This document shows positions 13,643-51,470 of a stretch of DNA of 64,000 nt, one piece after another. A model generated the notes under the pieces. It had not been told where the DNA came from. It saw only the letters and a program-made list of their open reading frames with translations, and ran no database searches. The stretch spans positions 124,001 to 188,000 of IMG/VR virus record IMGVR_UViG_3300033977_000108; one strand, written 5' to 3'. The position numbers and the translations under genes were made by a program. Every line of letters begins with the position of its first letter. Positions within the stretch are counted from its first letter, which is position 1.

Positions 13643-16027
13643 TCAATCCAGCTTCGTATCCAATTTATCTAGTATCCTGGAAAACTCCAGTCCTTTCATG
13701 AACTTATCTATGTCTTCCCAATCTGGCGTTCCATCTTTCTTGGCTGGGAGTTTGATTGTGAGGTTCGCCCGCTCATCGCGGAACTTCCTACCATAGTTGA
13801 ACCGGTAGGATTCATTGGTTATCAGCGTGGCTATAAAGAGCTTACAGGCAGGCGTGATCTTGTCTTCTAACCCTTTCTTGACAGTCAGGACACACGTATC
13901 GTTGGCAACATAGAAATCATCAGGCTGATAGAAAGCCACACCAGGCTGACCATTTGCCAGTACGGTGATCTTTCCACCATTATACTTAGTCTGTCCTTCA
14001 ATCTCTGGGAATAGACCTACAGACCCATTGTCTTTCGTAGTAGCTGCCAGCAACGGATACTTCTTCTCCCCTTCCAGTTTCTCGGCTTCGTATTGGGAAA
14101 TACCGACAGGCCATTCCATGTCGAATAAGTCTCGTAGTTTGAATGGTTTCCAGGTATCCTTCGACGGAAGCTTGGACTTGATAACCACCTGTTTCAACGA
14201 TAGCAGGTAAAGCTCCAGATCTTTGATTGCCTGGCCGAACAAACTCTCTCCTAATTTGGAGTAGTCCGTCTCCAAGTAAGCCTCAGCGCACCACTCATCA
14301 TCGGCTTTTACTACTTTCTTCACTGATTGTCCCGGTACTGTATCTCGCTTCCTATAAGCCGAGATCCATTCTTTCTTTCTTTGTTCCCAGGCGTCGTCGT
14401 GTTTCTCTACGCGCTTCCCCTTGAGCAACCTGAAGTTGTCGTCCTTCCATAGACCAAACCACGTCTCGCGGTCTTCCTGGTGTGGCTGATGGCACTTTAT
14501 AACAAATACACAAGTGACAGCGCCGATGCTTGGGAATAGCTGATTCGGCATGGACATGACAGCTTCCAATGTGTGCTTCTCCATCAGTTCTTTCTTCTTG
14601 GCTGATTTCTGGATCATGCAAGACATTGGAACGATCGCTATTAGCGTCGCGCCTGGTTCGGCTAGCTCGGCAGCTTTCAGCACGAAGTCAAGCTCTGTCT
14701 TGTCTTTTTCCTTCTGTGAGTACGGCGGGTTCAATAAGATCACGTTTATCTTCATCGCTCTTAGCCTTTTCTTTATGTCCTCTGGCAGATCAAGCGTGTC
14801 TTCATTGAACAGATTACTCTTCCCGTCGCCGCGGAAGATCATGTTGGCAGCTGCTAATACGTACATCAGCGTCTCAAGCTCCACACCGGCGAGGCCTTGC
14901 TTCTTGATCCGTTCCTTTATCTTTGGATCGTCGGTCTTGCCCAGCATGTAAGCCATGGCAGCCAGGAGGAAGCCGGCTGATCCGCAGCACGGATCGTAGA
15001 CTACCGATGAGTTGGGATTGAGATTGGCAAGATCGCAGAATAACTCAGTTATGTGCTGTGGTGTCAATACTATGCCAAGCCCTGAACCGTCACCGCCTGA
15101 GTACCGAATGAATTCGCTATAAAGATCACCGAGTACATCCACACCAGCGTCGGACGTCAAAGCAAGCGACATGATGTCGTCAATCATCTGTATGGCTTCC
15201 AGCAGATTGTTGCTAACTGCTGTCTCATCTAGGACTGTTTCTATTTGTCCCAGCATCTTACGCTGCTTTTCATCTGGGATACCAGCCTTGTCCAAGATGT
15301 TCTCAATAGCCTGCTTGCAATTCCTGACCAATTCTTTCTTGCTGGCTACAGTATAACCTTTGGCGAACGCCTTATCCTTGAGGGCAAGCAGGATAGCGGC
15401 TACCAGCTCAGGCTTGAGCGTCTCTTTCAAGCTCATCTTATCACGCAGGAAGTTGTGGAGCTTCTTAGCTAGCTTCTGTATCTCCTCTTTAGTTGGCAGT
15501 CTTGAAGCTTTTACTTCCTGTAGCAACTGCTCGCAATCTGCTATCGACAACAGCTTGTCTACCTTGAGCCGTTCTACCTTCCCATTGCGCCGGGCTCTGA
15601 ACCAGCTTATCCTATGATTGTCCTTTGGCCCGGAAACGGCGAGGCCTAACGTATTCCTCTTCTGCCTGGCGCCTTTCATGTAGCTGATAACCCCATCCTC
15701 AGCATAAGCTGTCTTCTTCAGGTTATCGTTCTCAGTTAGGGTCTCCTTGCTCGTGTGGTGTTCTTTATCTGCCTTACACTCAACAAGGAGTACATCGCCA
15801 CCATTGAAGGGATACACAAGCTCAGGCCTGCCTATGCCCCCTTTACCTGTCTTCGATTTGATAGCATCACGCAGAATCGGATCGTCTGTTCCCTGCACTC
15901 CTGCCCCTATCTTCTCGGAATCGAAACCATGCTCCTTGAGCCAGGTAAGCAGCCACTCTTCAACTGCCCGTTCATTCTTCCGTCTGTAGATTGTCTTGCG
16001 GTTGGGTTTGTAATTGGGATCTACCAT
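13643..16027 (-). CDS. Type IIG-like restriction-modification fusion (PD-(D/E)XK + gamma-class N6-adenine MTase + TRD)
   Basis: GRPE...LLVECK; TP.HI..LF; YDPCCGSAGF; NPPYS; HsdS-like C-terminus. Confidence 0.88.
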   Translation of the reverse strand: MVDPNYKPNRKTIYRRKNERAVEEWLLTWLKEHGFDSEKIGAGVQGTDDPILRDAIKSKTGKGGIGRPELVYPFNGGDVLLVECKADKEHHTSKETLTENDNLKKTAYAEDGVISYMKGARQKRNTLGLAVSGPKDNHRISWFRARRNGKVERLKVDKLLSIADCEQLLQEVKASRLPTKEEIQKLAKKLHNFLRDKMSLKETLKPELVAAILLALKDKAFAKGYTVASKKELVRNCKQAIENILDKAGIPDEKQRKMLGQIETVLDETAVSNNLLEAIQMIDDIMSLALTSDAGVDVLGDLYSEFIRYSGGDGSGLGIVLTPQHITELFCDLANLNPNSSVVYDPCCGSAGFLLAAMAYMLGKTDDPKIKERIKKQGLAGVELETLMYVLAAANMIFRGDGKSNLFNEDTLDLPEDIKKRLRAMKINVILLNPPYSQKEKDKTELDFVLKAAELAEPGATLIAIVPMSCMIQKSAKKKELMEKHTLEAVMSMPNQLFPSIGAVTCVFVIKCHQPHQEDRETWFGLWKDDNFRLLKGKRVEKHDDAWEQRKKEWISAYRKRDTVPGQSVKKVVKADDEWCAEAYLETDYSKLGESLFGQAIKDLELYLLSLKQVVIKSKLPSKDTWKPFKLRDLFDMEWPVGISQYEAEKLEGEKKYPLLAATTKDNGSVGLFPEIEGQTKYNGGKITVLANGQPGVAFYQPDDFYVANDTCVLTVKKGLEDKITPACKLFIATLITNESYRFNYGRKFRDERANLTIKLPAKKDGTPDWEDIDKFMKGLEFSRILDKLDTKLD

Positions 16028-32854: not shown

Positions 32855-33550
32855 CTAAAATGCCACCGTGGGTTCGGTATGGTCTGCCTTGTAAAACGAC
32901 TTTAGCAGGCTGGATATCCTCCTGCTATAGACGCCGCGCTCTACAAGTATTACATCCGGTACTCTGCCGGCGAAGTCTTTCAGTTTGACGTAGCTCTCTC
33001 GCGAATGTCCCTTGTCTTTCAGTGCGGCCAGGATTTCAGGTATGTTCTTCTGCGAGAGATCAAACCAGTTTGGATTCGTACCGGAATCTATTAGTATCTG
33101 CTGTAAAGCGATGTCGTATCTAAAGGAAAAGTAGGCGGTATAATGACAGAATGAACACCATGTCGGTTCATACGGGTGCCTATCAAAGTGCTCCTTCAGT
33201 CTAATCAGCTCGGCGGAGATGAGGCTCCCTCGCTGTATGGTATTGATGTCATATTTGCTTTTGAATCTGGAGTTTACGCCGGTTCGTATTACTTTCCTTT
33301 GACCGTGTGTGTCCATTATTGTGGTGTTCAATTCTTCATAGTCCTTTGGGTCAATGGCGGTATCCGTAAGGAATGCTGCCTGTATGAGGTTCTGGCATTC
33401 CGTACAAAAGTGGCCGTAGATTAGCTGCCTCGTAAGGGTCGGAGCGTGGCCCACTTTCTTGTATTCCTTGTCCTCCTTTGTTATGTCGCCCGTGGCCCAA
33501 GGGCTGAACCGAATGCTTGGCACATCGCCATCATAGAATAATTCTATCAT
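32855..33550 (-). CDS. Hypothetical Zn-binding protein
   Basis: HFCTEC...WCSFC. Confidence 0.6.
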   Translation of the reverse strand: MIELFYDGDVPSIRFSPWATGDITKEDKEYKKVGHAPTLTRQLIYGHFCTECQNLIQAAFLTDTAIDPKDYEELNTTIMDTHGQRKVIRTGVNSRFKSKYDINTIQRGSLISAELIRLKEHFDRHPYEPTWCSFCHYTAYFSFRYDIALQQILIDSGTNPNWFDLSQKNIPEILAALKDKGHSRESYVKLKDFAGRVPDVILVERGVYSRRISSLLKSFYKADHTEPTVAF

Positions 33551-36500
33551 AAGACCCTCTCATTCAGCAGCTCTTCGGTACCAAAGTCCAGGTTCTGCGT
33601 TATCTCCAGGTCTTCTCCAGCCTCTCTGAAGAAATCCAGGATGTGGGACCTGTCATCCAGCACGCGATTTACAAACCAGCGTATGTCCAGCGCGCTCGCC
33701 CTGACATTGATTACCTTGCGGTCCAATGCCTGCTCGGCAGCCGCCACTTTGGCATAAAAGGTATTGTAAACATGGTCATCAACTGTATTCTCCATCACAA
33801 GCAAATAGACATCACAGAACCTCTCCTCCTTCGTCGGTGTCATTACTCGGCTCCACGCCTGCGCCTGTAGCCCAGGCTGCCATAGCAAGTCGGTACAAAT
33901 CACTGATTTGGCAGCAGATAAGTCAACACCCTCTCTTATTTCCATCGTACCGGCTATCCAAAGATGTCTCTCTGGGTCGTCGCGGAAAGTGTCAAACGCT
34001 TCCCTGCGCTCTTCATCATTCCAGCTACCATCAAAGACGATGGGATTATAGCTAGCGAACTCTTTGGCAAGGGACTCCCTCATGGCTATAAAGCCGGATA
34101 GGATAACTATTTTCTCCCCTGCCATGGTTCTTTCCAGTACTATTCTCTTTATGTCGTCCATTTTGCCGCCGCCAGGCGGGCCGTGGTAAATAGGAGCCCT
34201 TGGCGGTTTCATCTTGGCCAGTACTTTATTGAAGTGTTCTGGGCAGGTAGCCGCGATGCGCATCTTGCTCATCTGCGAAATGACCATGGCGGGATTCACC
34301 AGATGGTGCTGTTGGGCGGCCTGCTGGGACAGCGTATTGAATTCTGTCTCAAACTGATTGATAGAAGATACAACCAGAGCCGCTTGTAAGGGATGCATCT
34401 TGGAGGCTACCCGATGCATTCTCGGCTTTGGTATGTGCAAGCCCAGCCTCTCCAGTGAGGACAGTACCAGCGGGTCTTCGTAACTTCTGCGCACCATCTT
34501 GGGTGCCATCAATTCCCAGAACTTGATCGGATTCTTCAGATATGGCAGCATCTTGCGGCTGTCTTTCAGCCCGCCGCGCTTATAGACCACATACTCGCAG
34601 AATTCATTATAGAAATCCGTGGCGCCGGCCGTTCCTTGATAGGGGAATGAAGCGGAGCCACCCTTGAAAATCCAGTGTAGCGGCCAATAGGCATCCGAGG
34701 GCGTATTCGGCATCAAAGTGCCCGTCATGCCCAGATGATGCTTGCCTCGGAATGTGCGTATTGCCTTCCCTACATCGCTTCCCTCCGATTTTATGGTATG
34801 AACTTCATCTACGATGACGGTGGGAAACCTATCCTTTATTCTGCGATAGACTGGGGGCACCCAGACACTATCTACCAATCCACACTCGCGGCACATGCGG
34901 CCTTTTATTGCTCTCGGATCGCAGTTCCTATGGACTTTTAGATTCAAGTCGCTCCATACATTCAGCTGCTTTGTCGTAGTCGTTTGCTTCAACTCAAAGC
35001 CTTTGGATTCAATGATTTTCTTGGATCGCCAGGCTGCTCCTCTCATTCGCCGGTTATCATATCTGCGAACACAGGCGGGATTTACGCACATGTACCCAAA
35101 GTTCCCGGCTTCTTCATGCCCCTTTACCGGCGCCTTATGAAACTCCAGCGGCATCTTCATCAGCAGATTCTTCTGCCCGGTGAGGGGGTCTTCGGAGATT
35201 AGTTTTGGCACATAAGGCCAAACCAAGGTGGAGCCGCAGTGCGGGCACTTGTGCTCATTTAGCACATCAGTCTTACCTTCCGTAAATCTAAAGCGTAGAT
35301 AACCTCTGCGTGCCTTCCTGTCCTTCTTTCCGGCGTCGTCCACGCCTCGGCCGGCTTGCCGCGGGCCGCCCTTGATCCAGGAGTAAGTCATCAAGTAAAT
35401 CTTCCCTGGCTTCTTCAAGTCTGCCAGACTATCTACTATGACATACTGTCCGAAGTATGGCAACACCTTGCTCAAGGCGTCCAAGTCCTTCTTCGTGAAG
35501 ATTCTGGCATTCCTTGGGCCTATCCAGGCGCACTTGTCCGAGCCCCACAACCAGGTCAGCACAGCAGATTCTCTGGTCTTCCCTTGTCTCATTGGCTTTA
35601 GGTCGGCCGCATTATCCTTAGTGGCCATCTGCGGGACATCAACATGGGAGTGGTCAAACAGGGCATCACCAAATACCTCCAGCTTTTCAGTGTAGTAGTT
35701 TATTAGTTCCGGGTATTTTGCAGGCACGCACTTCTTCGGGTCGTAGATTACCCTTTCGTCATAGGCGAAGTAGGTCTCCAGCGGAGTAGCGTTTTCATGG
35801 AAAGTCGTCCATTCAAATACGCTGGGTCCGCTGATAACCAGCTTTATGTTGGGGCGGATTGGCTCACGGAAAATCTTCACAATGCCATCCTGTCCGCTGC
35901 GTGAAGTATCTACTACTTGGTATCTCTCGCCCTTCTGAAAGATAAGCTCTTTGGCGGCTTGCTTGTGCTGTCCGGCATGCCCTTGATAGCCACTGTGTCC
36001 CGTGGGACCTTCCGGGGGTACATAGGTCGGTTCGGCTACAAAGTCGGCTTTGCAAGTAAGCACCATCCCGGCTTCCACTTTGTCGAATAGAGGCCTTGTA
36101 TCTTTGTATTCTGGCAAGAGGTAAGGCGTATTTTCTCTTTCCAGTCGCCTCTTCTCTTTCTTTAGCCAGTTGCCCAGGGTCGTGGATAGATTTACTTCTA
36201 AGCCATAGCTTTCCAATAACCTGGCTATTGGATGCTTGTTTAGTTCGGCATCTATTAGCATCCAAGCTCGGCTCTGTAAGGTCAGTTTTCTATGGCTAAT
36301 GTCAGATAAGATTTGCAGTTCAAGCTCGTCGTCTGGTTTATCAGGATCCGGGCGCTCTATTAGCAGCGCATGCAGTTCTTGGAGCAGCAAAGCCGACATT
36401 ACATCATTGGGAGAGATAACTATACGGCTGCCGCCTTTGTGTAGCGTCACGGAAGGCTTCTCTACCAATGCTAACGGCTGTATGATCTTCTGTTTCTTGG

Positions 36501-36597
36501 CCTTACTATGTATCACTGGGTCCTGCTTCTTGGCTGCTTGTTCTCCTGGGAACAAATCAGCCATCAGGGATAGCTGTCCTTTTATCTCCTTCTTCAT
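33547..36597 (-). CDS. Large SNF2-family SF2 helicase with Zn-finger insertion
   Basis: MRQGKT, IVDEVH, GMTGTLMPN, EGVDL, QAWSRV; inserted CPHC, CVNPAC, CREC. Confidence 0.8.
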   Translation of the reverse strand: MKKEIKGQLSLMADLFPGEQAAKKQDPVIHSKAKKQKIIQPLALVEKPSVTLHKGGSRIVISPNDVMSALLLQELHALLIERPDPDKPDDELELQILSDISHRKLTLQSRAWMLIDAELNKHPIARLLESYGLEVNLSTTLGNWLKKEKRRLERENTPYLLPEYKDTRPLFDKVEAGMVLTCKADFVAEPTYVPPEGPTGHSGYQGHAGQHKQAAKELIFQKGERYQVVDTSRSGQDGIVKIFREPIRPNIKLVISGPSVFEWTTFHENATPLETYFAYDERVIYDPKKCVPAKYPELINYYTEKLEVFGDALFDHSHVDVPQMATKDNAADLKPMRQGKTRESAVLTWLWGSDKCAWIGPRNARIFTKKDLDALSKVLPYFGQYVIVDSLADLKKPGKIYLMTYSWIKGGPRQAGRGVDDAGKKDRKARRGYLRFRFTEGKTDVLNEHKCPHCGSTLVWPYVPKLISEDPLTGQKNLLMKMPLEFHKAPVKGHEEAGNFGYMCVNPACVRRYDNRRMRGAAWRSKKIIESKGFELKQTTTTKQLNVWSDLNLKVHRNCDPRAIKGRMCRECGLVDSVWVPPVYRRIKDRFPTVIVDEVHTIKSEGSDVGKAIRTFRGKHHLGMTGTLMPNTPSDAYWPLHWIFKGGSASFPYQGTAGATDFYNEFCEYVVYKRGGLKDSRKMLPYLKNPIKFWELMAPKMVRRSYEDPLVLSSLERLGLHIPKPRMHRVASKMHPLQAALVVSSINQFETEFNTLSQQAAQQHHLVNPAMVISQMSKMRIAATCPEHFNKVLAKMKPPRAPIYHGPPGGGKMDDIKRIVLERTMAGEKIVILSGFIAMRESLAKEFASYNPIVFDGSWNDEERREAFDTFRDDPERHLWIAGTMEIREGVDLSAAKSVICTDLLWQPGLQAQAWSRVMTPTKEERFCDVYLLVMENTVDDHVYNTFYAKVAAAEQALDRKVINVRASALDIRWFVNRVLDDRSHILDFFREAGEDLEITQNLDFGTEELLNERVL

Positions 36598-36782: not shown

Positions 36783-37405
36783 TTATTCTTGGCTTTCCAT
36801 TTCAATTTGGCCGGCCGGGACATGCCTGTCCGGTCATAGAATAGTTTAGCTACATCATAGCCGCTGGACGGCTCGGTCATTGTGCGCTCTATCTCCGGTA
36901 ACGGAAGACCCAGCTCCAGCTGTTGTCCTCTGCCTGCCTTCTTGCATCTGCGCTGCTTATTGGCTATGAAGCCATAGAGTTCATCGCAATAGTCCTCCAC
37001 CAGAGCTTTCCTTTTGCGTTTCATTTTATCTAAGAACTCCGGCAGCTTGCAGAACTCGGCTAATCCTGATAGCTCATAATGTACATCAAAGCATAGCAGC
37101 TTCATTTCGTTATCAGAAAGCTTTTTGCTCTTCGTTGCGCGTTTCTTGCTATAGTAGACAACCTTTCGTGTCCTATCTCCCCAGGAATCAGGGTCGTACG
37201 AGCGGGCCCTGAATAAGTAGCAGTAAGCCTCCCAGAACTCCTGCGGAGTAATCGCATTCCCCAGCCCGAAGCATTGATAGCAATAAGTGGCGTCCTTTAT
37301 CAGCATTAGCCACGGCAGCTTGCTCCGGTCGTAGTTCGCTGGCGCACCTTCAAGCAGGTTCAGTTCTTCCAGTTTAGGTATCGCTGTGCGGGTTTCGTCT
37401 GGCAA
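36749..37405 (-). CDS. Hypothetical protein
   Basis: 218-aa ORF in series. Confidence 0.65.
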   Translation of the reverse strand: MPDETRTAIPKLEELNLLEGAPANYDRSKLPWLMLIKDATYCYQCFGLGNAITPQEFWEAYCYLFRARSYDPDSWGDRTRKVVYYSKKRATKSKKLSDNEMKLLCFDVHYELSGLAEFCKLPEFLDKMKRKRKALVEDYCDELYGFIANKQRRCKKAGRGQQLELGLPLPEIERTMTEPSSGYDVAKLFYDRTGMSRPAKLKWKAKNKWARSFRRRAA

Positions 37406-37697
37406 GGATGTCTTTTTCCTCCTTGGTTAGTTTATTCGTTGAATAAATCCTGAATGGTTCCGGCGGTTTCAAATACAGCCTCATCTTATTGCCCAGTTTC
37501 CTGTAAGTCTTGCGCCGTATGGCCGGCCGGACGACTATCCATCCGAACGGCATCTCGACAGGCTCTCTTCTTATTAGGGCGGCTATCCAGGCATCGCGTA
37601 CAACCTGAACGAATTTCCTGGACTTGCGCTTGGACAGCCCAAGAGTGCTGGCCAGCCATAGCGTCCCCTTGAACTCACTTTTTCCAGTAGTCGGCAA
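37374..37697 (-). CDS. HU/IHF-like DNA-binding protein
   Basis: LA..LGLSKR.....V......I..AL...EPVE.PFG...VRP..R pattern. Confidence 0.65.
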   Translation of the reverse strand: MPTTGKSEFKGTLWLASTLGLSKRKSRKFVQVVRDAWIAALIRREPVEMPFGWIVVRPAIRRKTYRKLGNKMRLYLKPPEPFRIYSTNKLTKEEKDILARRNPHSDT

Positions 37698-38243
37698 TGG
37701 TGACCTCCGTCTCGCCTTTTATAGTTTTGATGGTGTCGTGATAGACGGCATCCATACACCCTTTCACTATGGCCGCCACTGGCTCGGCATGATCTTCTCT
37801 GGCATGTACTATGATTTCATCATGTACGCAGGCGAGTAGATGGGCTTCGTAGATACGGGGCTTCCTTAGGTCTCCACCGTGTAAAGCCAGGCTAATCATA
37901 GACATAGCCCGCTTCAGCATGTCTACGCACTCGCCTTGGATGGGCTGATTGCCAGCCCAGCGGCCTACCTGTGCTCTCTTGGCTTCCTTATCGGGGTCAT
38001 CCTGGTCTATCTTGCGGTAGAACCGCTTCCTGCCGCGCCGTGTGGTAGAATACCAGAACTTCAATGCCATTGCCTTCTGGTCGTCCAGCCACTTACGGAG
38101 TTTGAAGGCTTTGGCGAACCATCTATCAATAAGCTCGCCGGCTTTATCATTGGTCATCCAGGCGGGATTAGGCTCGCCATTGGGCAGGAATTGCTTCTTG
38201 CCGCGATTGGCAAGTGCGGCTACGCGGGGAGCTTTGGCGCCAT
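37675..38243 (-). CDS. polA: DNA polymerase A, C-terminal subunit exon 2
   Basis: N.PIQG...D..K, motif C VHDE; upstream in-frame GAKAPRV completes motif B YG after splicing. Confidence 0.9.
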
Positions 38244-38908
38244 CAATATGTTACGATAGAACCGCATCCGTTCTATCTCTCTATGTTCCCATAGAGTTCA
38301 GACCATATCATTGCCCAATTGCTTGGGCACCAGGCGTTTCGGGAGCGCTGCTCCCTACTCCCTTGCGGGATGGTCGTTGCGCCTTCGGAAGATTATCCTG
38401 GCAGTGATGTTCTCGTCTGTGGCATTTTACGCATAACAACTCAAAGTTGTTATCCGTGTTATTGGTGCGGTCATGGTCTCTATGGTGAACATTCCATTGG
38501 GCATGGCTCGCATCCTGCAGGTCCTTGCCGCAGCGTTCGCAATAACGTCGCTCTGCCTTTATTTGACGTCTTCTTCGCATAAAGTAGCGTATGCCTGTCT
38601 TATATTGCGAATCATCCTGCCCGATATCATTGGTACCGCCACTCCCTACATTTATTATGTGCCCCTGCCTTAATCTATACGCCTTCATTACTCGTCTCAT
38701 TGTCTCTCTTTTATTGTCTTCTTTACAGAGCACGCAGACTTTCTGAGCCGGGCCTGTTGGCGTATAGCTTTTGTAGCATCTGATACATATTCTCGTAGGA
38801 AACGATACCATAAATCCTCCGCTTGGTTCAGGATTGTCCGTTCCGGACTTCCCCTGAGTTAACCTGGTTCTTCTATGCTTATTATAGCGTAGCCTCGTGT
38901 TTGAAAAC
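38244..38908 (-). mobile_element. Group I intron (IA-like) carrying an HNH endonuclease
   Basis: P1 with U.G splice pair; P AACTCAGGGGAA, Q AATCCTGAACCAAGC, R GCGCAACGACCA, S GATATGGTCTGAAC (P7 GACCA/TGGTC); terminal G at 38244. Confidence 0.9.
38308..38811 (-). CDS. Intron-encoded HNH homing endonuclease
   Basis: CERCG...VHHRDHDRTNN...NFELLCVKCHRREH; own GGAGG RBS. Confidence 0.9.
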   Translation of the reverse strand: MVSFPTRICIRCYKSYTPTGPAQKVCVLCKEDNKRETMRRVMKAYRLRQGHIINVGSGGTNDIGQDDSQYKTGIRYFMRRRRQIKAERRYCERCGKDLQDASHAQWNVHHRDHDRTNNTDNNFELLCVKCHRREHHCQDNLPKAQRPSRKGVGSSAPETPGAQAIGQ

Positions 38909-39287
38909 AAGGGACGCCAAATGTGATGTTCTTCGTCTGGCTCCGCAGCGTGACGAATTGGGCATGATCGGGATGGCTTTCGTCCTTATAGGCTTTGTAG
39001 AAGATGTCATAGCCAATACCTTCTATGTCGCTGGTCATAAAGCAATGGATGTCCTTATCCGAGTTCAGCGCATTAGTTAGCCAGGTGTCTCTTGAACAAT
39101 CAGCCATACTCTTGATTTCTATCTGTGAATAGTCGGCATCCAGTATCTTCCATCCTGGCGCCGCGCGTATTGCTTCCCTGGTGCTGGGCACCCGCCAATA
39201 GATGGCATACCTGCCATTCTGGCGGGGGCCTTCAAGCCAGAACTCTTTCTTGCCTATGTTCCCGAGATACTTGCTTGGTGCTGCCAA
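38909..39287 (-). CDS. polA: DNA polymerase A, C-terminal subunit exon 1
   Basis: REAIRAAPGWKILDADYSQIE (motif A), DIH, RSQTKNITFGVP (motif B start). Confidence 0.9.
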
Positions 39288-39538
39288 AGCGCCTCCCTGT
39301 CATACTTATAAACAAACTTCGCGCGCTCTACCCGGAACGGACCTACTTCGGCGAACTTGAGTTTGGGATCCAGTTCCAATTGGCGCTCCAGGCCGGTGAA
39401 GACAGCTTCGAGTTCCTTGCTCGTCGGCAGTGGCACAACTTTCTTCCCTGTGTGGTATATCACACGCCAGTTCTCCTCTTGGAGCCACACAAGGATGTAG
39501 TTCACGCACACCTTTTTCCTTCGGTACGTTTGTTTCAC
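39254..39538 (-). CDS. Hypothetical protein inside the polA split
   Basis: Coupled ORF. Confidence 0.6.
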   Translation of the reverse strand: MKQTYRRKKVCVNYILVWLQEENWRVIYHTGKKVVPLPTSKELEAVFTGLERQLELDPKLKFAEVGPFRVERAKFVYKYDREALWQHQASISGT

Positions 39539-39771
39539 TAATCCTCTTCTGGTAGAAGCTCTCGTAATCTATCGCAGGCGGCGTCCCAACGATTTACATC
39601 GGCCTGTAGGGTGGCCTTTTGCTTGGCCACAATGGTGGAGGCATCAAGCCCCTGGCTTAGATTGAATACTACATTGCTGAGGAAGGTACCAGCTAATCCT
39701 ACTTCGCTAATAGCCTTCCTCAATCTGGGAGGAATACTGTGGACTTTATAAGCTTTATTCTGTTGGGGCAT
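39538..39771 (-). CDS. Hypothetical protein inside the polA split
   Basis: Start refined to MPQQNK. Confidence 0.55.
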   Translation of the reverse strand: MPQQNKAYKVHSIPPRLRKAISEVGLAGTFLSNVVFNLSQGLDASTIVAKQKATLQADVNRWDAACDRLRELLPEED

Positions 39772-40255
39772 CTTTCTTCTTGCCTGCCGGCGACCCAAAT
39801 CCGACATGGCGTTCCTCCGTTTCGTTGTCGTCCTCAGTCTCAAAGAACCGGGTCAGGTCTCCTGAGCCACTGGCGACTGCTTCCATGTGGGCCTTCTCGG
39901 CTCTCATCATGTTGCGCTGATCGCGCCGCGTAAAGATAGACTCCAGCACTACTTGTCCTGTCTCATTTCTAAAGGGCATCCACTGCAGTTCCTGGGCAAC
40001 CAGTGGGAAAACGCCAGCTGCCTGCTCCAGGAATTCCGTTTGCAGTTTCACTGATTTGGCGGACGCCGCCAGTGCTTCAGAGCCAATCACCTGTGCATCG
40101 CGAAAGGCTCTATCAGCTGCACGCGCCGTCTTTACTTCCAGGTCTCTGGCTATCTCCAGGTCGGCGAATAAATGTAGCAGCTTCTCTTTCTGTTCTAATT
40201 CCTTTATGTCATCCACGATTAGTTGGATGATCTTGAATGTTCGCTTAATTGCCAT
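39755..40255 (-). CDS. Helical hypothetical protein inside the polA split
   Basis: 166-aa ORF overlapping the polA-N stop. Confidence 0.65.
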   Translation of the reverse strand: MAIKRTFKIIQLIVDDIKELEQKEKLLHLFADLEIARDLEVKTARAADRAFRDAQVIGSEALAASAKSVKLQTEFLEQAAGVFPLVAQELQWMPFRNETGQVVLESIFTRRDQRNMMRAEKAHMEAVASGSGDLTRFFETEDDNETEERHVGFGSPAGKKKDAPTE

Positions 40256-41624
40256 AGGGTTCTAACTCCAATCCTTTCAGCGCGTTGGCGCCAAGTGTCT
40301 CTACGACTTTGAGTTCTTCATCGGTAGGTTGCTCCCTGACATCCTCAGGTCTTGGTATCTGTTGAATGTCAGAGGCATACCTTCCTGTGGAGGTGCCTCG
40401 TCCTATTTGCCTCTTTGCCGTCGGCGTATCCCCAGAGCCCATTTGTTCCATGTGGGGTATCAGGGTGCCTAGAACGGGGTGCCGCTTATCCAGCAAGTTC
40501 TGTCCGTAGGTGGATGTTATCTTCTGGCATTCCGTGTATTCAGCCAGCAGTTGGGCTATTTCACTGTCCAGGGCGGCAAGGGTCTCCCTCTTTACATCCT
40601 TCAACTTTATGCCCATCAGTTCCAGGGCTTCCAGCTTTTGGGAGGGCGAGTCAAGGTCAAAGCTGTCTACTACCGGCATTATCGTCAATTGCTTTCGGCC
40701 TTTTAGGTTCAGGGCGTCGTTGTATAACTTGGTTACCGCCTCTTCTATTTCCTTCTGGCGCCGGACATAAGGAAGAATAGACAGCATTAGGATGTCCTCG
40801 TCCAGGCGTATGCCTGTTGCTGTTGCTCGCTCACGGTATTCCTTTTCTACGACGCCTTCCATCTCGGCTGTAACATGTATCTGTAGGAATTCGTCTCTGG
40901 CGGCTCTGCCAAGGTTCCATTGGGAGAGTGCCTTTGTCTGCGCTTCATAGATGGGGAACAACAGGAAGACATCGCGCGCGGCATAATAGAGCATCTCTTT
41001 GGTGAATTTTCCAATGGCAGCAAAGTTAGCGAAGGAATCCCTTACCGTCTTGGTGATTATATAATGGGGTGGGTATTTCATTGCCAGGTCTTTGATGCTT
41101 ACTCTTACGCCCGGGTAGCCGGCGGTGATAAGCTGCTCCGCCAACATAGTATCAAATAGCCTGCAAGTAGAGCCTCCCAACCGGATATTGTATTTCTGCA
41201 GCGCGAACTCATAGTCAAAGACAAGGTTCTGGCCTATCAATAAGGCCTTGTCGTTGCCTATCCTGGGCTCCAGGAATAAAGCTAACCCTGGGTCTATCAA
41301 GTAGATACATTCCGGTACGCCCCATTGAAGCAGGACTACTTCTGATGTGGCACCCAAAGGATCCAGGCCTTCTTTACCACCTGCCCCGCTGGTTTCACTA
41401 TCGTAGCCGTGGATAGAAAACCGGTCCATGTATTTGAAGATAGGGTCAAGATCCGTCGGCGAGTTGACAAGCAATAAGTGGTCGGACTCTACGACGCCCG
41501 GGTCAAAGTACTTGTCAAACCAATCCGGGCTGCCTATTACTTGATAGTTTATCTCTATCTTGCTCTCATAAGCAGCCACGTTTTCAAAGCCGGTGAGCTT
41601 CTTGTAGCTTTTGAAGCCTCTCAT
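40245..41624 (-). CDS. polA: DNA polymerase A, N-terminal subunit (3'-5' exonuclease + thumb)
   Basis: ExoI YDSET, ExoII NLVFD, ExoIII YAARD, LDSP.Q, TGR...QQIPR; lacks motifs A-C. Confidence 0.9.
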   Translation of the reverse strand: MRGFKSYKKLTGFENVAAYESKIEINYQVIGSPDWFDKYFDPGVVESDHLLLVNSPTDLDPIFKYMDRFSIHGYDSETSGAGGKEGLDPLGATSEVVLLQWGVPECIYLIDPGLALFLEPRIGNDKALLIGQNLVFDYEFALQKYNIRLGGSTCRLFDTMLAEQLITAGYPGVRVSIKDLAMKYPPHYIITKTVRDSFANFAAIGKFTKEMLYYAARDVFLLFPIYEAQTKALSQWNLGRAARDEFLQIHVTAEMEGVVEKEYRERATATGIRLDEDILMLSILPYVRRQKEIEEAVTKLYNDALNLKGRKQLTIMPVVDSFDLDSPSQKLEALELMGIKLKDVKRETLAALDSEIAQLLAEYTECQKITSTYGQNLLDKRHPVLGTLIPHMEQMGSGDTPTAKRQIGRGTSTGRYASDIQQIPRPEDVREQPTDEELKVVETLGANALKGLELEPYGN

Positions 41625-42130
41625 CTTTTGGACCTCCGCTTCTTTGATTTCGCTTTCTTGGACTTTTTGTAGCCTTCATAGTCCCACCCAAGAAATGTCT
41701 GCAGGTTCTTATACTCATAATCGGATAATGGCTCGGCTATCTTCATCGGGTCGTCGCTGATTTGGTCAGGCATGTCATTCAGTTCGGTGGGTCGGAGACC
41801 CATCTTGATGAGGGCTGCTGTGAAGATGTAGGCAATGGCATTCCACGCCAACTGGGAGGCGTGAGGTTCATTGCGTCGGCCGCATTTGAGCTTGGCCAAA
41901 TGGCGCTCCATTGAATCAATGTATTGGCTCAACGGCATGCCTTTCTCCCAGTTTCTAGCGTCATATTTAAGGGCACCGTCTTCCCAGATGCGGGAAATCA
42001 TAAGTACTACCCAACCTGGTACAAGGTGCGGTGCGCCTTTGCCATACTGCATGTCTCGTTGGGCGCCTGTATTCCATACTTTCCTGATGCCTGAGTCTTC
42101 AAGGGCGTCTTGTTTCTTTGATTTCTTCAT
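41621..42130 (-). CDS. dATP/dGTP diphosphohydrolase-domain (DUF5664-like) protein
   Basis: TGAQRD...G....GALKY..RNWEKGMP......S..RH...H...AWN. Confidence 0.8.
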   Translation of the reverse strand: MKKSKKQDALEDSGIRKVWNTGAQRDMQYGKGAPHLVPGWVVLMISRIWEDGALKYDARNWEKGMPLSQYIDSMERHLAKLKCGRRNEPHASQLAWNAIAYIFTAALIKMGLRPTELNDMPDQISDDPMKIAEPLSDYEYKNLQTFLGWDYEGYKKSKKAKSKKRRSKR

Positions 42131-49822: not shown

Positions 49823-50322
49823 ACTTTGTTGCCAATCACGGTCCCAGGGGATGTATCAACAATCTTTATTTGTATGCCGGCTTCGTCCAGCATTTCCTTG
49901 GCAATCAATAGATCGGGCCCCCAGCGTGGATTGTCGTATTCTGGCGGTGTTGTGACAATCCTCTTTATCCCAGCCTGGATTATCGCCCTGGCGCAGTCCG
50001 TGCAGCAAAGGCTCATAAGATAGATGGTGCAACCCTCCATAGGGATGCCTATCCTTGCCGCATTGTAAATAGCGTTGCGCTCCCCGTGTTCGTACCACCG
50101 GTATTTCAGCGGGCGTTCGTTCCGCGCTTTGACATTGTCATTCAGCCCGCGGCACAAGCCATTGTAGCCCGTCGCCCGTACTACATGGCTGTCGTCAGCG
50201 ATAACAGTGCCTATTTTAGTTGATTCGTCTTTGCTCCAGCCTGAGATGTATCGCGCCAGTTCCAGAAGCCGTACATCCCAGTTCACTTTTTCACTCATCT
50301 TTCCTCCTATGATTGCACGCAA
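49819..50322 (-). CDS. dCMP deaminase
   Basis: S.D...KIG, TGYNG, EHGERNAI, C.DCA.AI.Q.GIK. Confidence 0.9.
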   Translation of the reverse strand: MRAIIGGKMSEKVNWDVRLLELARYISGWSKDESTKIGTVIADDSHVVRATGYNGLCRGLNDNVKARNERPLKYRWYEHGERNAIYNAARIGIPMEGCTIYLMSLCCTDCARAIIQAGIKRIVTTPPEYDNPRWGPDLLIAKEMLDEAGIQIKIVDTSPGTVIGNKV

Positions 50323-51470
50323 GCCAATAGGTAGGTTGCAGTCTGCTCAGCGTTGTCATTGTCTAATAGCAAGACCCTCGTGCTATCAGTAGTAGTAGTA
50401 ATAGTCAGCACATTGCCGCTATTCTTCAGCATTATGGGGGTCAAGTATCTGGCATTCAAGTACATAGTATGTGCCAGTTTCTGGGCTGGGTCGGCGCCGT
50501 TGACTGATGCGCTGAAACTACCAGTCGTCCTGCCGCCAGTGCTCAAGCTCAAGGTATTACCCTTGAGTACGATTTTTATCTTGCCGTCGTCGGCGAAAGG
50601 TATCGCGCGCTGTAAGGCCTGCCGCAGTATATTATAGTCTATTTTGAAGGAGCTGCCAGCTATTTTATGAGCCTGTTCCAGTGCCAGGTTAGGGTTGGGG
50701 AAAGGCTCGGTGAGCAAGGAAACCCCAAAGAATACTCTCGCGAACTTGAAGAATACCTTGGTTGGTTTTCCGTCCTCGCCCTTGTCAAACACTACCTGGA
50801 CTAACTCCTCCTTGGCTCTGGATAGCAGAGACTTCAGAAAAGCTAATCCATAGCCTGGAATCAAGGCTTGGTGGCCAGGCCCTGGAGACTTCTCGTCTTT
50901 TGAATAGGCAACGGCCAGGATGTTCCCGTCGGTTGCCTCAGCAACGTAGCCATCCTGCACTGTTTTCAGATTGACGCCGGACATAGCTATAGTCCGGCTC
51001 GCAGTAGTGCAGAATTCGGTCCTGGCAATCATCTCGGTCAACTTGTCGGCCTCCATTTCAAATAGAGGCTTTTCCTTGAACGGCATAGTATCTACCAGAG
51101 ACTTTATGCCTGGATCGCCGGCGCCACCCAGCACCATGCCCTTGCCCAGGCTGGACTTGAAGTCAAGGTTGCCGCTATTGCTGGCTGACAATTCCACTTC
51201 CTCTTCTTCCGGCAAGTTATAGAGAAAGTCCGTCAGCAATCGGGGACGAATAGTTACCGAGCCAAGGGTCTCCACTTCCACGGGCAGGCTGACTAATGTC
51301 TTTGCTATCATGTCGGTAGAGAACATTAGCAGCCTCTGATTGCCTTTATCTTTCTCGCCCAGCGTGTACATGTAGAGCCAGCTGCTGGGTAAGTCTTCTC
51401 TCTTTCCTATTGTTATGGCCGCTTGGGTCAGGGCCTCAAAGAATTCACCGGCCTTGGTTTTTAGTTTCAT
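50307..51470 (-). CDS. dnaN: DNA polymerase III beta sliding clamp-like
   Basis: 387 aa; T.F...L.GV.L, ATDG..LA, FPN, NARYL patterns. Confidence 0.75.
   Translation of the reverse strand: MKLKTKAGEFFEALTQAAITIGKREDLPSSWLYMYTLGEKDKGNQRLLMFSTDMIAKTLVSLPVEVETLGSVTIRPRLLTDFLYNLPEEEEVELSASNSGNLDFKSSLGKGMVLGGAGDPGIKSLVDTMPFKEKPLFEMEADKLTEMIARTEFCTTASRTIAMSGVNLKTVQDGYVAEATDGNILAVAYSKDEKSPGPGHQALIPGYGLAFLKSLLSRAKEELVQVVFDKGEDGKPTKVFFKFARVFFGVSLLTEPFPNPNLALEQAHKIAGSSFKIDYNILRQALQRAIPFADDGKIKIVLKGNTLSLSTGGRTTGSFSASVNGADPAQKLAHTMYLNARYLTPIMLKNSGNVLTITTTTDSTRVLLLDNDNAEQTATYLLACVQS

What the first reader, a model, noticed from the sequence alone, without database searches (positions are those of the whole stretch)
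37675..41624. Family A DNA polymerase split into two genes with three unrelated ORFs in the break
Seen: the N-gene ends soon after TGR...QQIPR and the C-gene resumes at REAIRAAPG; in intact PolA these motifs are only a few residues apart. The roughly 960-bp gap holds three coupled ORFs with no nuclease motif, no group I/II intron signature and no intein residues that I can see. Each half has an extra terminal tail of 25-35 aa. All catalytic motifs are intact. Inference: a heterodimeric PolA assembled in trans, with the tails as a possible interface and the inserted ORFs as possible accessory subunits (a beta clamp is also encoded).
Basis: partly seen in the sequence, partly recalled or inferred. 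Interest (0 to 1): 0.78.

Follow-up and report, generated by a model that had tools for sequence, protein, structure and literature searches.

The report
Split jumbo-phage DNA polymerase plus intron
The only DNA polymerase of this 205-kb peat phage is encoded as two proteins, with a conserved small gene of unknown function between the halves and a self-splicing intron inside the second half. A whole clade of uncultured large phages shares the split, so it is a working design and not damage.

Summary
The split is real, but the DNA holds three PolA pieces, not two. Break 1 (957 nt, window 40244-39288) is a true gene fission. It lies between QQIPR and motif A, in a surface loop of a 67-aa insert specific to this clade.

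About 30 relatives (35-51% identical, contigs up to 232 kb) share the fission. In every locus examined a 133-178 aa gene lies between the halves, and wherever a sequence was available it is homologous to ORF1. ORF2 and ORF3 occur only in this genome and are cargo.

Three fused relatives carry them contiguously. On the tree, the two full-length fused relatives tested nest inside the split clade, so they are secondary re-fusions.

It interrupts motif B (FGVP|YG). P1 covaries in three phages, and the joined exons give an uninterrupted 315-aa protein.

The ORF1 family has no detectable relative by sequence or fold. Its role as a third subunit is inferred, not shown. Split PolAs are already published (MEP401, T7-like cyanophages), so this is a new variant of a known kind. 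Moderate interest.

The parts
40245..41624 (-). PolA-N gene (459 aa). It holds the 3'-5' exonuclease, the thumb and the first part of the palm up to TGR...QQIPR, then a 34-aa tail (predicted strand plus two helices).
   Evidence: PF01612 E 5e-12 and PF00476 profile positions 14-132. About 30 homologues of 419-468 aa. The tail is conserved as PRPE.Y..V.D..EL..V...F...L across the clade.
39755..40255 (-). ORF1 (166 aa), a member of a conserved family of small proteins encoded between the two PolA halves. Candidate accessory subunit; function not known.
   Evidence: Its start overlaps the N-gene stop. Homologues sit at the same place in every split locus with DNA. The profile finds 73 clusters, about 60 of them standalone proteins of 133-171 aa. 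The AF2 model has pLDDT 88: a 63-residue helix, a beta hairpin, a helix and an acidic tail. No Pfam, PDB or fold match. Codon-usage score 0.27, like the phage's own genes.
39538..39807 (-). ORF2 (89 aa), found only in this genome. Cargo gene in the break.
   Evidence: GGAGGA lies 6 nt before the ATG. No homologue in the relatives' loci or elsewhere in this genome. In-frame codon score 0.09, against an off-frame maximum of -0.14.
39254..39538 (-). ORF3 (94 aa from GTG; gene callers elsewhere start it later, giving 83 or 69 aa), found only in this genome. Cargo gene in the break.
   Evidence: Only a self-hit among 5.8 billion proteins. In-frame codon score 0.18. The Atlas lead to PRiA4_ORF3 scores 0.71, below the tool's trust level.
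38909..39287 (-). PolA-C exon 1. TTG start, a 36-aa head (predicted three strands), motif A DADYSQIE and motif B up to KNITFGVP plus the first base of the Tyr codon.
   Evidence: PF00476 profile positions 141-198. GGGAGG lies before the TTG. Splice point derived and checked.
38244..38908 (-). Group I intron (665 nt) in motif B of PolA-C.
   Evidence: RF00028 full-length match at 29.9 bits, E 9e-5, below the gathering score of 50. The last exon base is U, paired to G in P1, and the last intron base is G. P1 covaries: CCUU/GAGG here, CCAU/GUGG in L004, CCGU/GCGG in phage DES1. Minimum-free-energy folds give P1-P9. 48 nt of the core are about 90% identical to the PolA introns of phages PPWS1 and DES1. 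The joined exons read FGVPYG, as in intron-less relatives.
38308..38811 (-). HNH homing-endonuclease gene (167 aa) inside the intron.
   Evidence: PF01844 at 24 bits (cut-off 21.4) and phrog_25862 E 8e-32. 63% identical to the intron ORF of L004 and E 2.5e-31 to that of phage DES1. Codon score -0.02, unlike the phage's own genes.
37675..38243 (-). PolA-C exon 2: the rest of motif B (Y)GAKAPRVAALA, the fingers, motif C VHDEIIV and the C terminus.
   Evidence: PF00476 profile positions 233-380, E 5e-23. The spliced product is 315 aa with no stop and aligns in one piece with intron-less relatives.
41621..42130 (-). Upstream neighbour coupled to PolA-N: a dATP/dGTP diphosphohydrolase-type gene (context, same operon).
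   Evidence: PF18909 E 6e-15. The same gene precedes PolA-N in relatives.
50307..51470 (-). Beta sliding clamp gene (context).
   Evidence: PF02767 E 6e-10 and PF00712 E 2.5e-6.

Best explanation
This is the replicative family A DNA polymerase of a jumbo phage, inherited as a fissioned gene.

Inferred mechanism:
- The enzyme is made as two polypeptides: N (exonuclease, thumb and first palm segment) and C (motif A, fingers, motif C).
- They assemble by rebuilding the palm and a 67-aa alpha/beta insert specific to this clade. The N tail supplies one strand and two helices; the C head supplies three strands. The cut lies in a loop of that insert.
- All genes in the cluster are same-strand and overlapping, so they are probably co-transcribed and translationally coupled.

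ORF1: a conserved gene of this family lies between the halves in every split locus examined. It most likely encodes a partner of the polymerase, either an assembly or bridging subunit or a processivity or adaptor subunit. This role is inferred from linkage and conservation only.

The space behind ORF1 is a landing pad for extra genes. Here it holds the orphans ORF2 and ORF3; elsewhere it holds HNH genes, a ligase or small ORFs.

In this phage and its closest relative, the C gene has separately been invaded by a mobile group I intron with an HNH homing endonuclease, at the FGxxYG codons of motif B. The intron must splice out of the mRNA to give the 315-aa C subunit.

The confidence given is for the two-chain enzyme plus the intron. 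The partner role of ORF1 alone I put at about 0.5-0.6.
For: Shown:
- The split, the ORFs, their overlaps and their ribosome-binding sites.
- Of 33 clusters 35-51% identical to the N gene, 31 are 419-468 aa long.
- All 13 loci examined have the order N, a 133-178 aa ORF, C. ORF1 homology was demonstrated for the 11 whose sequence could be tested.
- The ORF1 family is present once per genome in both complete relatives searched. Between the window and L004 it is 69% identical, against 51% for the N gene.
- The window holds no terminator-like or promoter-like site on the coding strand within break 1.
- This is the only polymerase found in a complete 204.6-kb genome: no PolB and no Pol III alpha.
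- The exonuclease motifs and motifs A, B and C are all present.
- Fused relatives P0010, P0012 and P0034 carry tail and head contiguously, 87 aa against 20 aa in standard PolAs.
- The P0010 model (pLDDT 93, pTM 0.91, Z 32 to Pol I structures) shows the insert as ordered, with the break in its least confident loop.
- The fused forms nest inside the split clade (branch supports 99 and 98; AU test p 0.0002). The fission is therefore older than the fusion and stable.
- Intron evidence.
- The assembly stands in one 125.8-kb contig at depth 61 with no variants.
Against: - There is no RNA or protein data. No RNA run was listed.
- The complex prediction of N + C + ORF1 homologue gave no answer: ipSAE 0.00, partner pLDDT 41, controls not run.
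- The ORF1 family has no similarity to any known accessory factor.
- The fused relative lacks the ORF1 family within 22 kb, so the polymerase fold itself can do without it.
- In two loci another gene sits between N and the ORF1 homologue.
- The Rfam score of the intron is below the family's gathering score.
Confidence: 0.8

Rival explanations
1. ORF1 is not a polymerase subunit. It is a passenger: the surviving gene of the mobile element that originally split the gene, or an unrelated replication or host-takeover gene. It stays where it is only because the site tolerates insertions.
For: The break is plainly a landing pad: HNH genes, a ligase and orphan ORFs sit there. Phage MEP401 has an unrelated 78-aa ORF at almost the same cut. 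The fused relative has no ORF1 homologue nearby. No binding was predicted.
Against: The family keeps its position next to N, and usually overlaps the N-gene stop, across 23-69% sequence divergence. It has conserved residues (W92, G100, E105, F108, T109, R111, R114, R118) and the phage's own codon usage. All other cargo in the break varies. The model shows no nuclease fold.
Confidence: 0.3
2. Break 1 is also removed at the RNA level (an unrecognised intron, or trans-splicing), so one polypeptide is made.
For: A related group I intron sits just upstream of motif A in the T7-like phage PPWS1. Rfam's group I model is weak on phage introns: the real one here scores only 30 bits.
Against: No Rfam match in the gap even at E 10. 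Coding ORFs tile the gap with overlaps. In relatives only 0-18 nt are non-coding between N, the ORF1 homologue and C, which leaves no room for a ribozyme core. The C gene has its own ribosome-binding site and start, which is an ATG in L004.
Confidence: 0.03
3. The halves are joined after translation by a split intein.
For: Split inteins with intervening endonuclease genes are known in phage replication genes ('fractured genes', PMC2677866; MIJ3 PolB, PMC6892783).
Against: The N tail starts with Pro and is 34 aa long. The C head does not end in His-Asn followed by Cys, Ser or Thr. Both tails are retained, contiguous and folded, in the fused relatives, so they are polymerase sequence and not intein.
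Confidence: 0.02
4. The polymerase is a decaying pseudogene or an assembly artefact.
For: Three pieces and a TTG start could look like decay.
Against: The same architecture occurs in dozens of independent metagenomes. All catalytic motifs are kept, codon usage is in frame, and it is the only polymerase found in a complete genome with terminal repeats. One contig at even depth 61 shows no variant.
Confidence: 0.02

Closest known systems
Split DNAP of OM43 phages MEP401/MEP402 (Zobellviridae; gp13 / gp14 / gp15; PMC10580990, OP830906)
   Same: PolA cut inside the polymerase domain just before motif A: gp13 ends ...TGRLSSSSPNLQN...IKTLF..., and gp15 starts MILNADAKALEW. A small ORF of unknown function lies between the halves and the genes abut tightly. 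The phage is cultured, so such an enzyme works.
   Different: The cut lies about 10 residues further on, after the R..F segment. There is no 67-aa insert. gp14 (78 aa) is unrelated to the ORF1 family. It is a 43-kb podovirus in a different PolA lineage, so the fission is independent.
Exo/pol split PolA of T7-like cyanophages (S-SBP1, S-TIP37; PMC10201439, PMC12695635)
   Same: A family A replicase encoded as two adjacent genes that are predicted to reassemble into the standard fold.
   Different: There the cut is at the domain border between exonuclease and polymerase, with no gene in between. Here the catalytic palm itself is divided and a conserved gene sits in the break.
Group I (IA2-type) introns with HNH genes in phage PolA genes (Xanthomonas phage DES1, Pectobacterium phage PPWS1, cyanophage Pf-WMP3 I-PfoP3I, PMC3428280; phiI/W31 of Bonocora and Shub 2004, from my own knowledge)
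   Same: The same core sequence (48 nt about 90% identical). An HNH ORF sits in a peripheral loop. The intron interrupts a conserved PolA motif. In DES1 it is in motif B, one codon away from the site here, with a homologous HNH protein (E 2.5e-31).
   Different: The host here is a jumbo phage with an already fissioned polymerase. Splicing and homing were not tested.
Gene fission by homing-endonuclease genes in T4-related phages (split gp43, nrdA/mobE; review PMC2988022; details from my own knowledge)
   Same: Essential replication genes are split at conserved sites where endonuclease genes land, and the products reassemble. The relative L007 carries two HNH genes and a duplicated 54-aa copy of the C head in the break.
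   Different: Those are family B polymerase or RNR genes. No endonuclease gene lies in break 1 of this window, and the conserved resident gene is not a recognisable nuclease.

Membership tests
Family A DNA polymerase (Pol I-like, with proofreading) | Polymerase motifs A (DYSQIE), B (R..K...FG..YG) and C (HDE) | tested here: met
   DADYSQIE. RSQTKNITFGVP|YG, complete only after the intron is removed. VHDEIIV. PF00476 matches in all three pieces.
Family A DNA polymerase (Pol I-like, with proofreading) | 3'-5' exonuclease domain with Exo I-III acidic residues | tested here: met
   PF01612 E 5e-12. D75 and E77 are at least 90% conserved and D218 is invariant; Y214 is at least 90% conserved in the clade.
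Family A DNA polymerase (Pol I-like, with proofreading) | Klenow-like fold of the assembled enzyme | tested here: inconclusive
   The fused relative P0010 models as Pol I (Z 32, 540 residues aligned). The two-chain assembly of the split form was not modelled successfully.
Family A DNA polymerase (Pol I-like, with proofreading) | Polymerase activity | not testable with these tools
   Needs expression of N + C.
Group I intron | Match to the RF00028 covariance model at the gathering score | tested here: not met
   29.9 bits against a gathering score of 50, E 9e-5, full-length match. The accepted intron of phage PPWS1 scores no better, 32.2 bits.
Group I intron | 5' splice site after a U paired to G in P1; terminal G; P1 supported by covariation | tested here: met
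   CCUU|GU..ACGAGG with a U.G pair at the splice site, and the intron ends ..AUAUUG. Position -2 and its partner read U-A, A-U and G-C in three introns.
Group I intron | Conserved core helices P3-P9 | tested here: met
   The Rfam alignment and independent minimum-free-energy folds of the ORF-less introns give P2, P3 (ACCAGG/CCUGGU; ACUAGG/CCUAG in DES1), P4/P5, P8, P9 and P9.x.
Group I intron | Exon ligation restores the reading frame | tested here: met
   379 + 569 nt give 315 codons with no stop, reading FGVPYGA as in intron-less relatives.
Group I intron | Self-splicing | not testable with these tools
   No RNA run was listed.
HNH homing endonuclease | HNH motif over the Pfam cut-off, encoded inside a mobile intron, with a sporadic distribution | tested here: met
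   PF01844 at 24 bits (cut-off 21.4). phrog_25862 E 8e-32. Within the clade it is present only in the window and L004, and also in the unrelated phage DES1.
Split intein | N-intein starting with Cys/Ser/Ala; C-intein ending in His-Asn followed by Cys/Ser/Thr; intein blocks A, B, F and G | tested here: not met
   The tail starts PEDV and the head ends ..WRVPST|REAIRA. The tails persist in the fused proteins.
Exo/pol-split T7-like PolA (S-SBP1 type) | Cut between the exonuclease and polymerase domains | tested here: not met
   The cut lies at PF00476 profile positions 132/141, within the polymerase domain.
MEP401-type split PolA | Cut just upstream of motif A with a small ORF in between | tested here: met
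   This is the same architecture, but the intervening ORFs are not homologous and the polymerases are only distantly related, so it is a parallel case and not the same family.

The most novel reading that the evidence does not exclude
The ORF1 family is an obligate third subunit of a three-part family A replicase. Its 63-residue helix would pack on the conserved amphipathic helices of the N tail. Its small beta-hairpin/basic-helix module (FT.R..RN..R) and acidic tail would hold the reconstituted insert together, or would tether the enzyme to DNA, the clamp or the helicase. This would be a new kind of polymerase accessory factor that arose together with the fission and was lost when the gene re-fused.
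Probability: 0.3. Interest if true: 0.7.

Novelty: new variant of a known kind. Interest (0 to 1): 0.5.

Why it matters
- It shows that a family A polymerase can be cut through its catalytic palm, not only at a domain border, and stay that way across a deep and widespread clade of large phages.
- It gives the first comparative handle on the "small unknown ORF inside a split DNAP" that was noted but left unexplained in the OM43 phages. Here the ORF belongs to a conserved, confidently modelled family of 73 clusters that can be tested as a polymerase partner.
- The nested fused forms are a natural control (same enzyme, one chain, no ORF1) for asking what the split and the extra protein are for.
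- Practically, annotation pipelines call these genes "hypothetical" or truncated PolA (as in phage DES1) and miss the intron.

Tried and rejected
- Complex prediction on N + C + ORF1 homologue of relative L052: no answer (ipSAE 0.00, partner pLDDT 41), so it is not used as evidence either way.
- ORF1 family against Pfam, PHROGs, PDB sequences, the ESM Atlas, Foldseek PDB/BFVD/AFDB and VIA-align: nothing beyond long-helix matches. There is a weak, untrustworthy resemblance of helix/hairpin/helix to MADS-box domains (E about 1.4, TM 0.13-0.37).
- ORF3's Atlas lead to PRiA4_ORF3 (score 0.71) is not backed by Pfam.
- RNA evidence: no RNA run was listed. The only DNA run is probably the source sample.
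- Cultured relatives: none above about 31% identity in 50,697 phage records.
- Frameshift fusion of N to ORF1 was considered and rejected. The ORF1 frame is closed two codons before its ATG.
- The Rfam alignment's own P1 and splice point (after AACAU) was rejected in favour of the junction that restores FGVPYG and shows covariation.
- A first intron alignment cut off the 3' core, which lies inside the end of the HNH ORF. It was redone.

Full report
**Where the window lies.** The window is bases 124001-188000 of a 204,633-bp virus record with direct terminal repeats, rated complete. It comes from a peat metagenome. The region is the replication module, all on the minus strand:
- RNR, RlaP, dUTPase and a dATP/dGTP diphosphohydrolase-type gene;
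- the polymerase cluster;
- a 1016-aa SNF2-type helicase;
- further off, a DnaG-DnaB fusion, RecA, a beta clamp and a RecD2-like helicase.

No family B polymerase and no Pol III alpha is found in the genome, and the PolA matches are only the pieces discussed here. This is therefore the phage's only recognisable DNA polymerase.

**Anatomy.** Reading the minus strand:
- PolA-N, 41624..40245, 459 aa. It holds the exonuclease domain and PF00476 profile positions 14-132, and ends ...TGRYASDIQQIPR plus 34 aa.
- ORF1, 40255..39755, 166 aa. Its ATG lies inside the last codons of N.
- ORF2, ATG 39807..39538, 89 aa, behind GGAGGA.
- ORF3, GTG 39538..39254, 94 aa, sharing TAGTG with the ORF2 stop.
- PolA-C exon 1, TTG 39287..38909, behind GGGAGG. 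It has a 36-aa head, REAIRAAPG, motif A DADYSQIE and motif B up to KNITFGVP.
- A 665-nt group I intron, 38908..38244, containing an HNH gene, 38811..38308.
- PolA-C exon 2, 38243..37675: (Y)GAKAPRVAALA..., motif C VHDEIIV and the C terminus.

On the coding strand of break 1 there is no promoter-like or terminator-like site. The counts for the whole scan are at or below the shuffled expectation. Codon usage supports all the ORFs in their frames: ORF1 0.27, ORF2 0.09, ORF3 0.18, against an off-frame maximum of -0.14. It marks the HNH gene as foreign, at -0.02.

- Rfam gives a full-length RF00028 match at 29.9 bits (E 9e-5). This is below the gathering score, but the homologous element in the closest relative (33.5 bits) and the annotated intron of Pectobacterium phage PPWS1 (32.2 bits) score no better.
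- I placed the splice sites by the protein. Fused and intron-less relatives read FGVPYGAG. Joining ...GGCGTCCCTT to ATGGCGCC... gives KNITFGVPYGAKAPRVAALA.
- The last exon base is U and the last intron base is G.
- P1 is CCUU|GU...ACGAGG, with the U.G wobble at the cut.
- The same helix reads CCAU|UG...CAGUGG in relative L004 and CCGU|UA...UAGCGG in Xanthomonas phage DES1. Position -2 and the first two intron bases change together with their partners.
- Folding the ORF-less introns independently gives P1, P2, P3, P4/P5, P8 and P9 in each.
- The in-silico ligated gene is 948 nt, or 315 aa, with no stop. It aligns as one segment with intron-less relatives, for example residues 7-315 against P0010 residues 455-762 at 48% identity.
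- 48 nt of the core are about 90% identical to the PolA introns of PPWS1 and DES1.
- DES1 carries a homologous HNH protein (E 2.5e-31) and is also interrupted in motif B, three bases away from the site used here.
- Within the clade only the window and L004 have the intron, the patchy pattern expected of a mobile element.

This part is a new member of a known kind.

**The first break is a true, old gene fission.**
- The N gene has 33 clusters of relatives at 35-51% identity. Thirty-one of them are 419-468 aa long. They come from contigs of up to 232 kb with the same gene order.
- Standard PolAs have 20 residues between QQIP and DYSQIE. The fused relatives P0010, P0012 and P0034 have 87. The window has 35 (N) + 52 (C) = 87.
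- An AlphaFold2 model of fused P0010 (pLDDT 93, pTM 0.91; Z 32 to Pol I structures) shows the insert as ordered:
  - strand 418-421 and helices 425-434 and 436-446, corresponding to the N tail;
  - loop 447-453, the least confident part of the insert, corresponding to the break;
  - strands 454-459, 462-467 and 477-482, corresponding to the C head.
- The N tail is conserved across the clade as PRPE.Y..V.D..EL..V...F...L.
- In the split enzymes this small unit must therefore be rebuilt from the two chains. It rests on a model of a relative, not on a model or measurement of the complex.

**The break cannot be an intron.**
- Rfam finds nothing in it at E 10.
- In relatives the N gene, the middle gene and the C gene overlap or are 0-18 nt apart, which leaves no room for a ribozyme.
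- It is not a split intein. The termini lack the intein residues, and both tails stay in the fused proteins.
- It is not an assembly error. One 125.8-kb contig at depth 61 carries it without variants, although that run is probably the source sample.

**Direction of change.**
- I built a maximum-likelihood tree of the N part with seven standard PolAs as outgroup. The two fused proteins form a pair deep inside the split forms (supports 99 and 98).
- The AU test rejects a tree that keeps all split forms together without them (p 0.0002). The group was named after I had seen the tree.
- One old fission followed by one re-fusion is the simplest reading.
- The fused P0010 gene lies in an island next to an integrase, between ABC-transporter genes and a FecR gene. 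This is a bacterial context, and no ORF1 homologue lies within the 22 kb read.

**What lies in the break.**
- ORF1 is the constant. In all 13 loci examined a 133-178 aa ORF lies between N and C, usually overlapping the N-gene stop. It is homologous to ORF1 in the 11 loci whose sequence could be tested (for example E 2e-14 to the L005 copy at 29% identity).
- A profile of the family finds 73 clusters at 50% identity among 1.84 billion representatives. About 60 of them are standalone proteins of 133-171 aa.
- Three distant members that I looked up (E 4e-30, 4e-17, 3e-10) sit between PolA-N and PolA-C, or next to cut genes on short contigs.
- There is one copy in each of the two complete relatives searched.
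- Everything else in the break varies:
  - nothing more in five loci;
  - ORF2 and ORF3 here;
  - 67- and 134-aa ORFs in L054, and a 75-aa ORF in L057;
  - seven ORFs including a ligase-like gene in the P0029 locus;
  - two HNH-type genes plus a 54-aa duplicate of the C head in L007.
- ORF2 and ORF3 have no homologue anywhere. They are cargo, not conserved subunits.

**What ORF1 might be.**
- Its model is confident (pLDDT 88, above 90 for residues 11-130). It shows a single 63-residue helix (20-82), a beta hairpin (93-105), a helix (110-130) carrying the conserved FT.R..RN..R, and then a disordered acidic tail. In some members the tail ends in GF.
- No sequence or fold search gives a credible relative.
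- The one complex prediction I could run returned "no answer".
- Fixed position, coupling to N, conservation on a par with the polymerase and native codon usage favour a functional partner of the polymerase. I put that at roughly 0.5-0.6, and at about 0.3 for the strong form of an obligate third subunit.
- The main rival, at about 0.3, is that ORF1 is a tolerated passenger at an insertion-prone site. The fused relative does without it. However, any deletion that re-fuses the halves must remove it, so its absence there is weak evidence.

**Comparison with what is known.**
- Czernecki et al. 2023 reported the exo/pol split of T7-like cyanophage PolAs as the first PolA fission (PMC10201439). That cut is at a domain border and has no gene in it.
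- I read that locus. gp13 ends after TGR...PNLQN...IKTLF and gp15 starts at motif A, so the cut is within about ten residues of the one here. There is no insert, and gp14 is unrelated to the ORF1 family.
- PPWS1's intron also sits just before motif A.
- The stretch before motif A is thus a recurrent breakpoint. That fits the usual habit of homing elements to target conserved DNA; this point is from my own knowledge.
- New here are a deep, conserved fission through the palm in a clade of jumbo phages, a conserved and modelled protein family tied to it, and evidence for a later re-fusion. I did not find this described, but my literature search was limited to open-access full text.

**Verdict.** This is a new variant of a known kind, of moderate interest.

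Noticed in passing
window 41621-42130 (-); G000:C1:196720-197796 = L066:1312-2592 (-): The gene coupled to the start of PolA-N is a MazZ-type dATP/dGTP diphosphohydrolase (PF18909, E 6e-15). The genome also has a divergent adenylosuccinate-synthetase homologue (PF00709, E 6e-67). That homologue is far below the NCBIfam cut-offs for both PurA (184 vs 402 bits) and PurZ (51.5 vs 300 bits). Relative G001 has one too; G002 does not. This may point to 2-aminoadenine (Z) DNA or another purine pathway. It is not established.
   Followed up: partly
L007:6256-8291 (same in L012): In this 215-kb relative the break holds a reverse-strand 211-aa HNH-type gene, the ORF1 homologue, a 54-aa ORF that duplicates the C-gene head (LGIKDGKEYYY...WRV) and a 197-aa HNH-like gene. 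These are the marks of repeated endonuclease-gene insertion at the break.
   Followed up: partly
L064:6029-18900 (JGI contig of 26 kb): The fused PolA P0010 lies in an integrase-bounded island between ABC-transporter and FecR genes. Its neighbours are an AEP-TOTE/DEAD primase-helicase, an RNase H-like gene (RVT_3), a DUF123 gene and HU. A jumbo-phage-type polymerase has apparently been captured by a small integrative element.
   Followed up: partly
L056 (Xanthomonas phage DES1, OK624832, 7821-10441): The DES1 PolA is annotated as two 'hypothetical proteins' flanking an 'HNH nuclease'. It is a PolA interrupted in motif B by the same kind of group I intron. The intron is not annotated in the record.
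   Followed up: yes
P0029 locus (ENA contig of 204 kb, gene table only): Here 3.2 kb with seven ORFs, including a 361-aa gene with a faint DNA-ligase hit, separate PolA-N from PolA-C. No DNA was available to check.
   Followed up: no
L052:10753-11359 and L054:9702-11320: In two relatives the large helicase downstream of the polymerase cluster shows a weak LAGLIDADG_3 hit. This may be an intein or an endonuclease insertion in that gene. The window's copy (33547-36597) shows none.
   Followed up: no
L023:6051-6816 (204-kb IMG/VR contig): A distant PolA (25% identical) has a homologue of the intron's HNH protein (E 9e-14) right after its motif A/B piece. This suggests another PolA interrupted near motif B.
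   Followed up: no
window 13643-16027 (-): A 794-aa protein joins an N6 DNA methylase domain to a type I specificity (S) domain in one chain.
   Followed up: no
window 37374-37697 (-): A 107-aa basic ORF overlaps the end of PolA-C by 23 nt, at the place where relatives encode an HU-like protein (Bac_DNA_binding). It has no Pfam hit here.
   Followed up: partly
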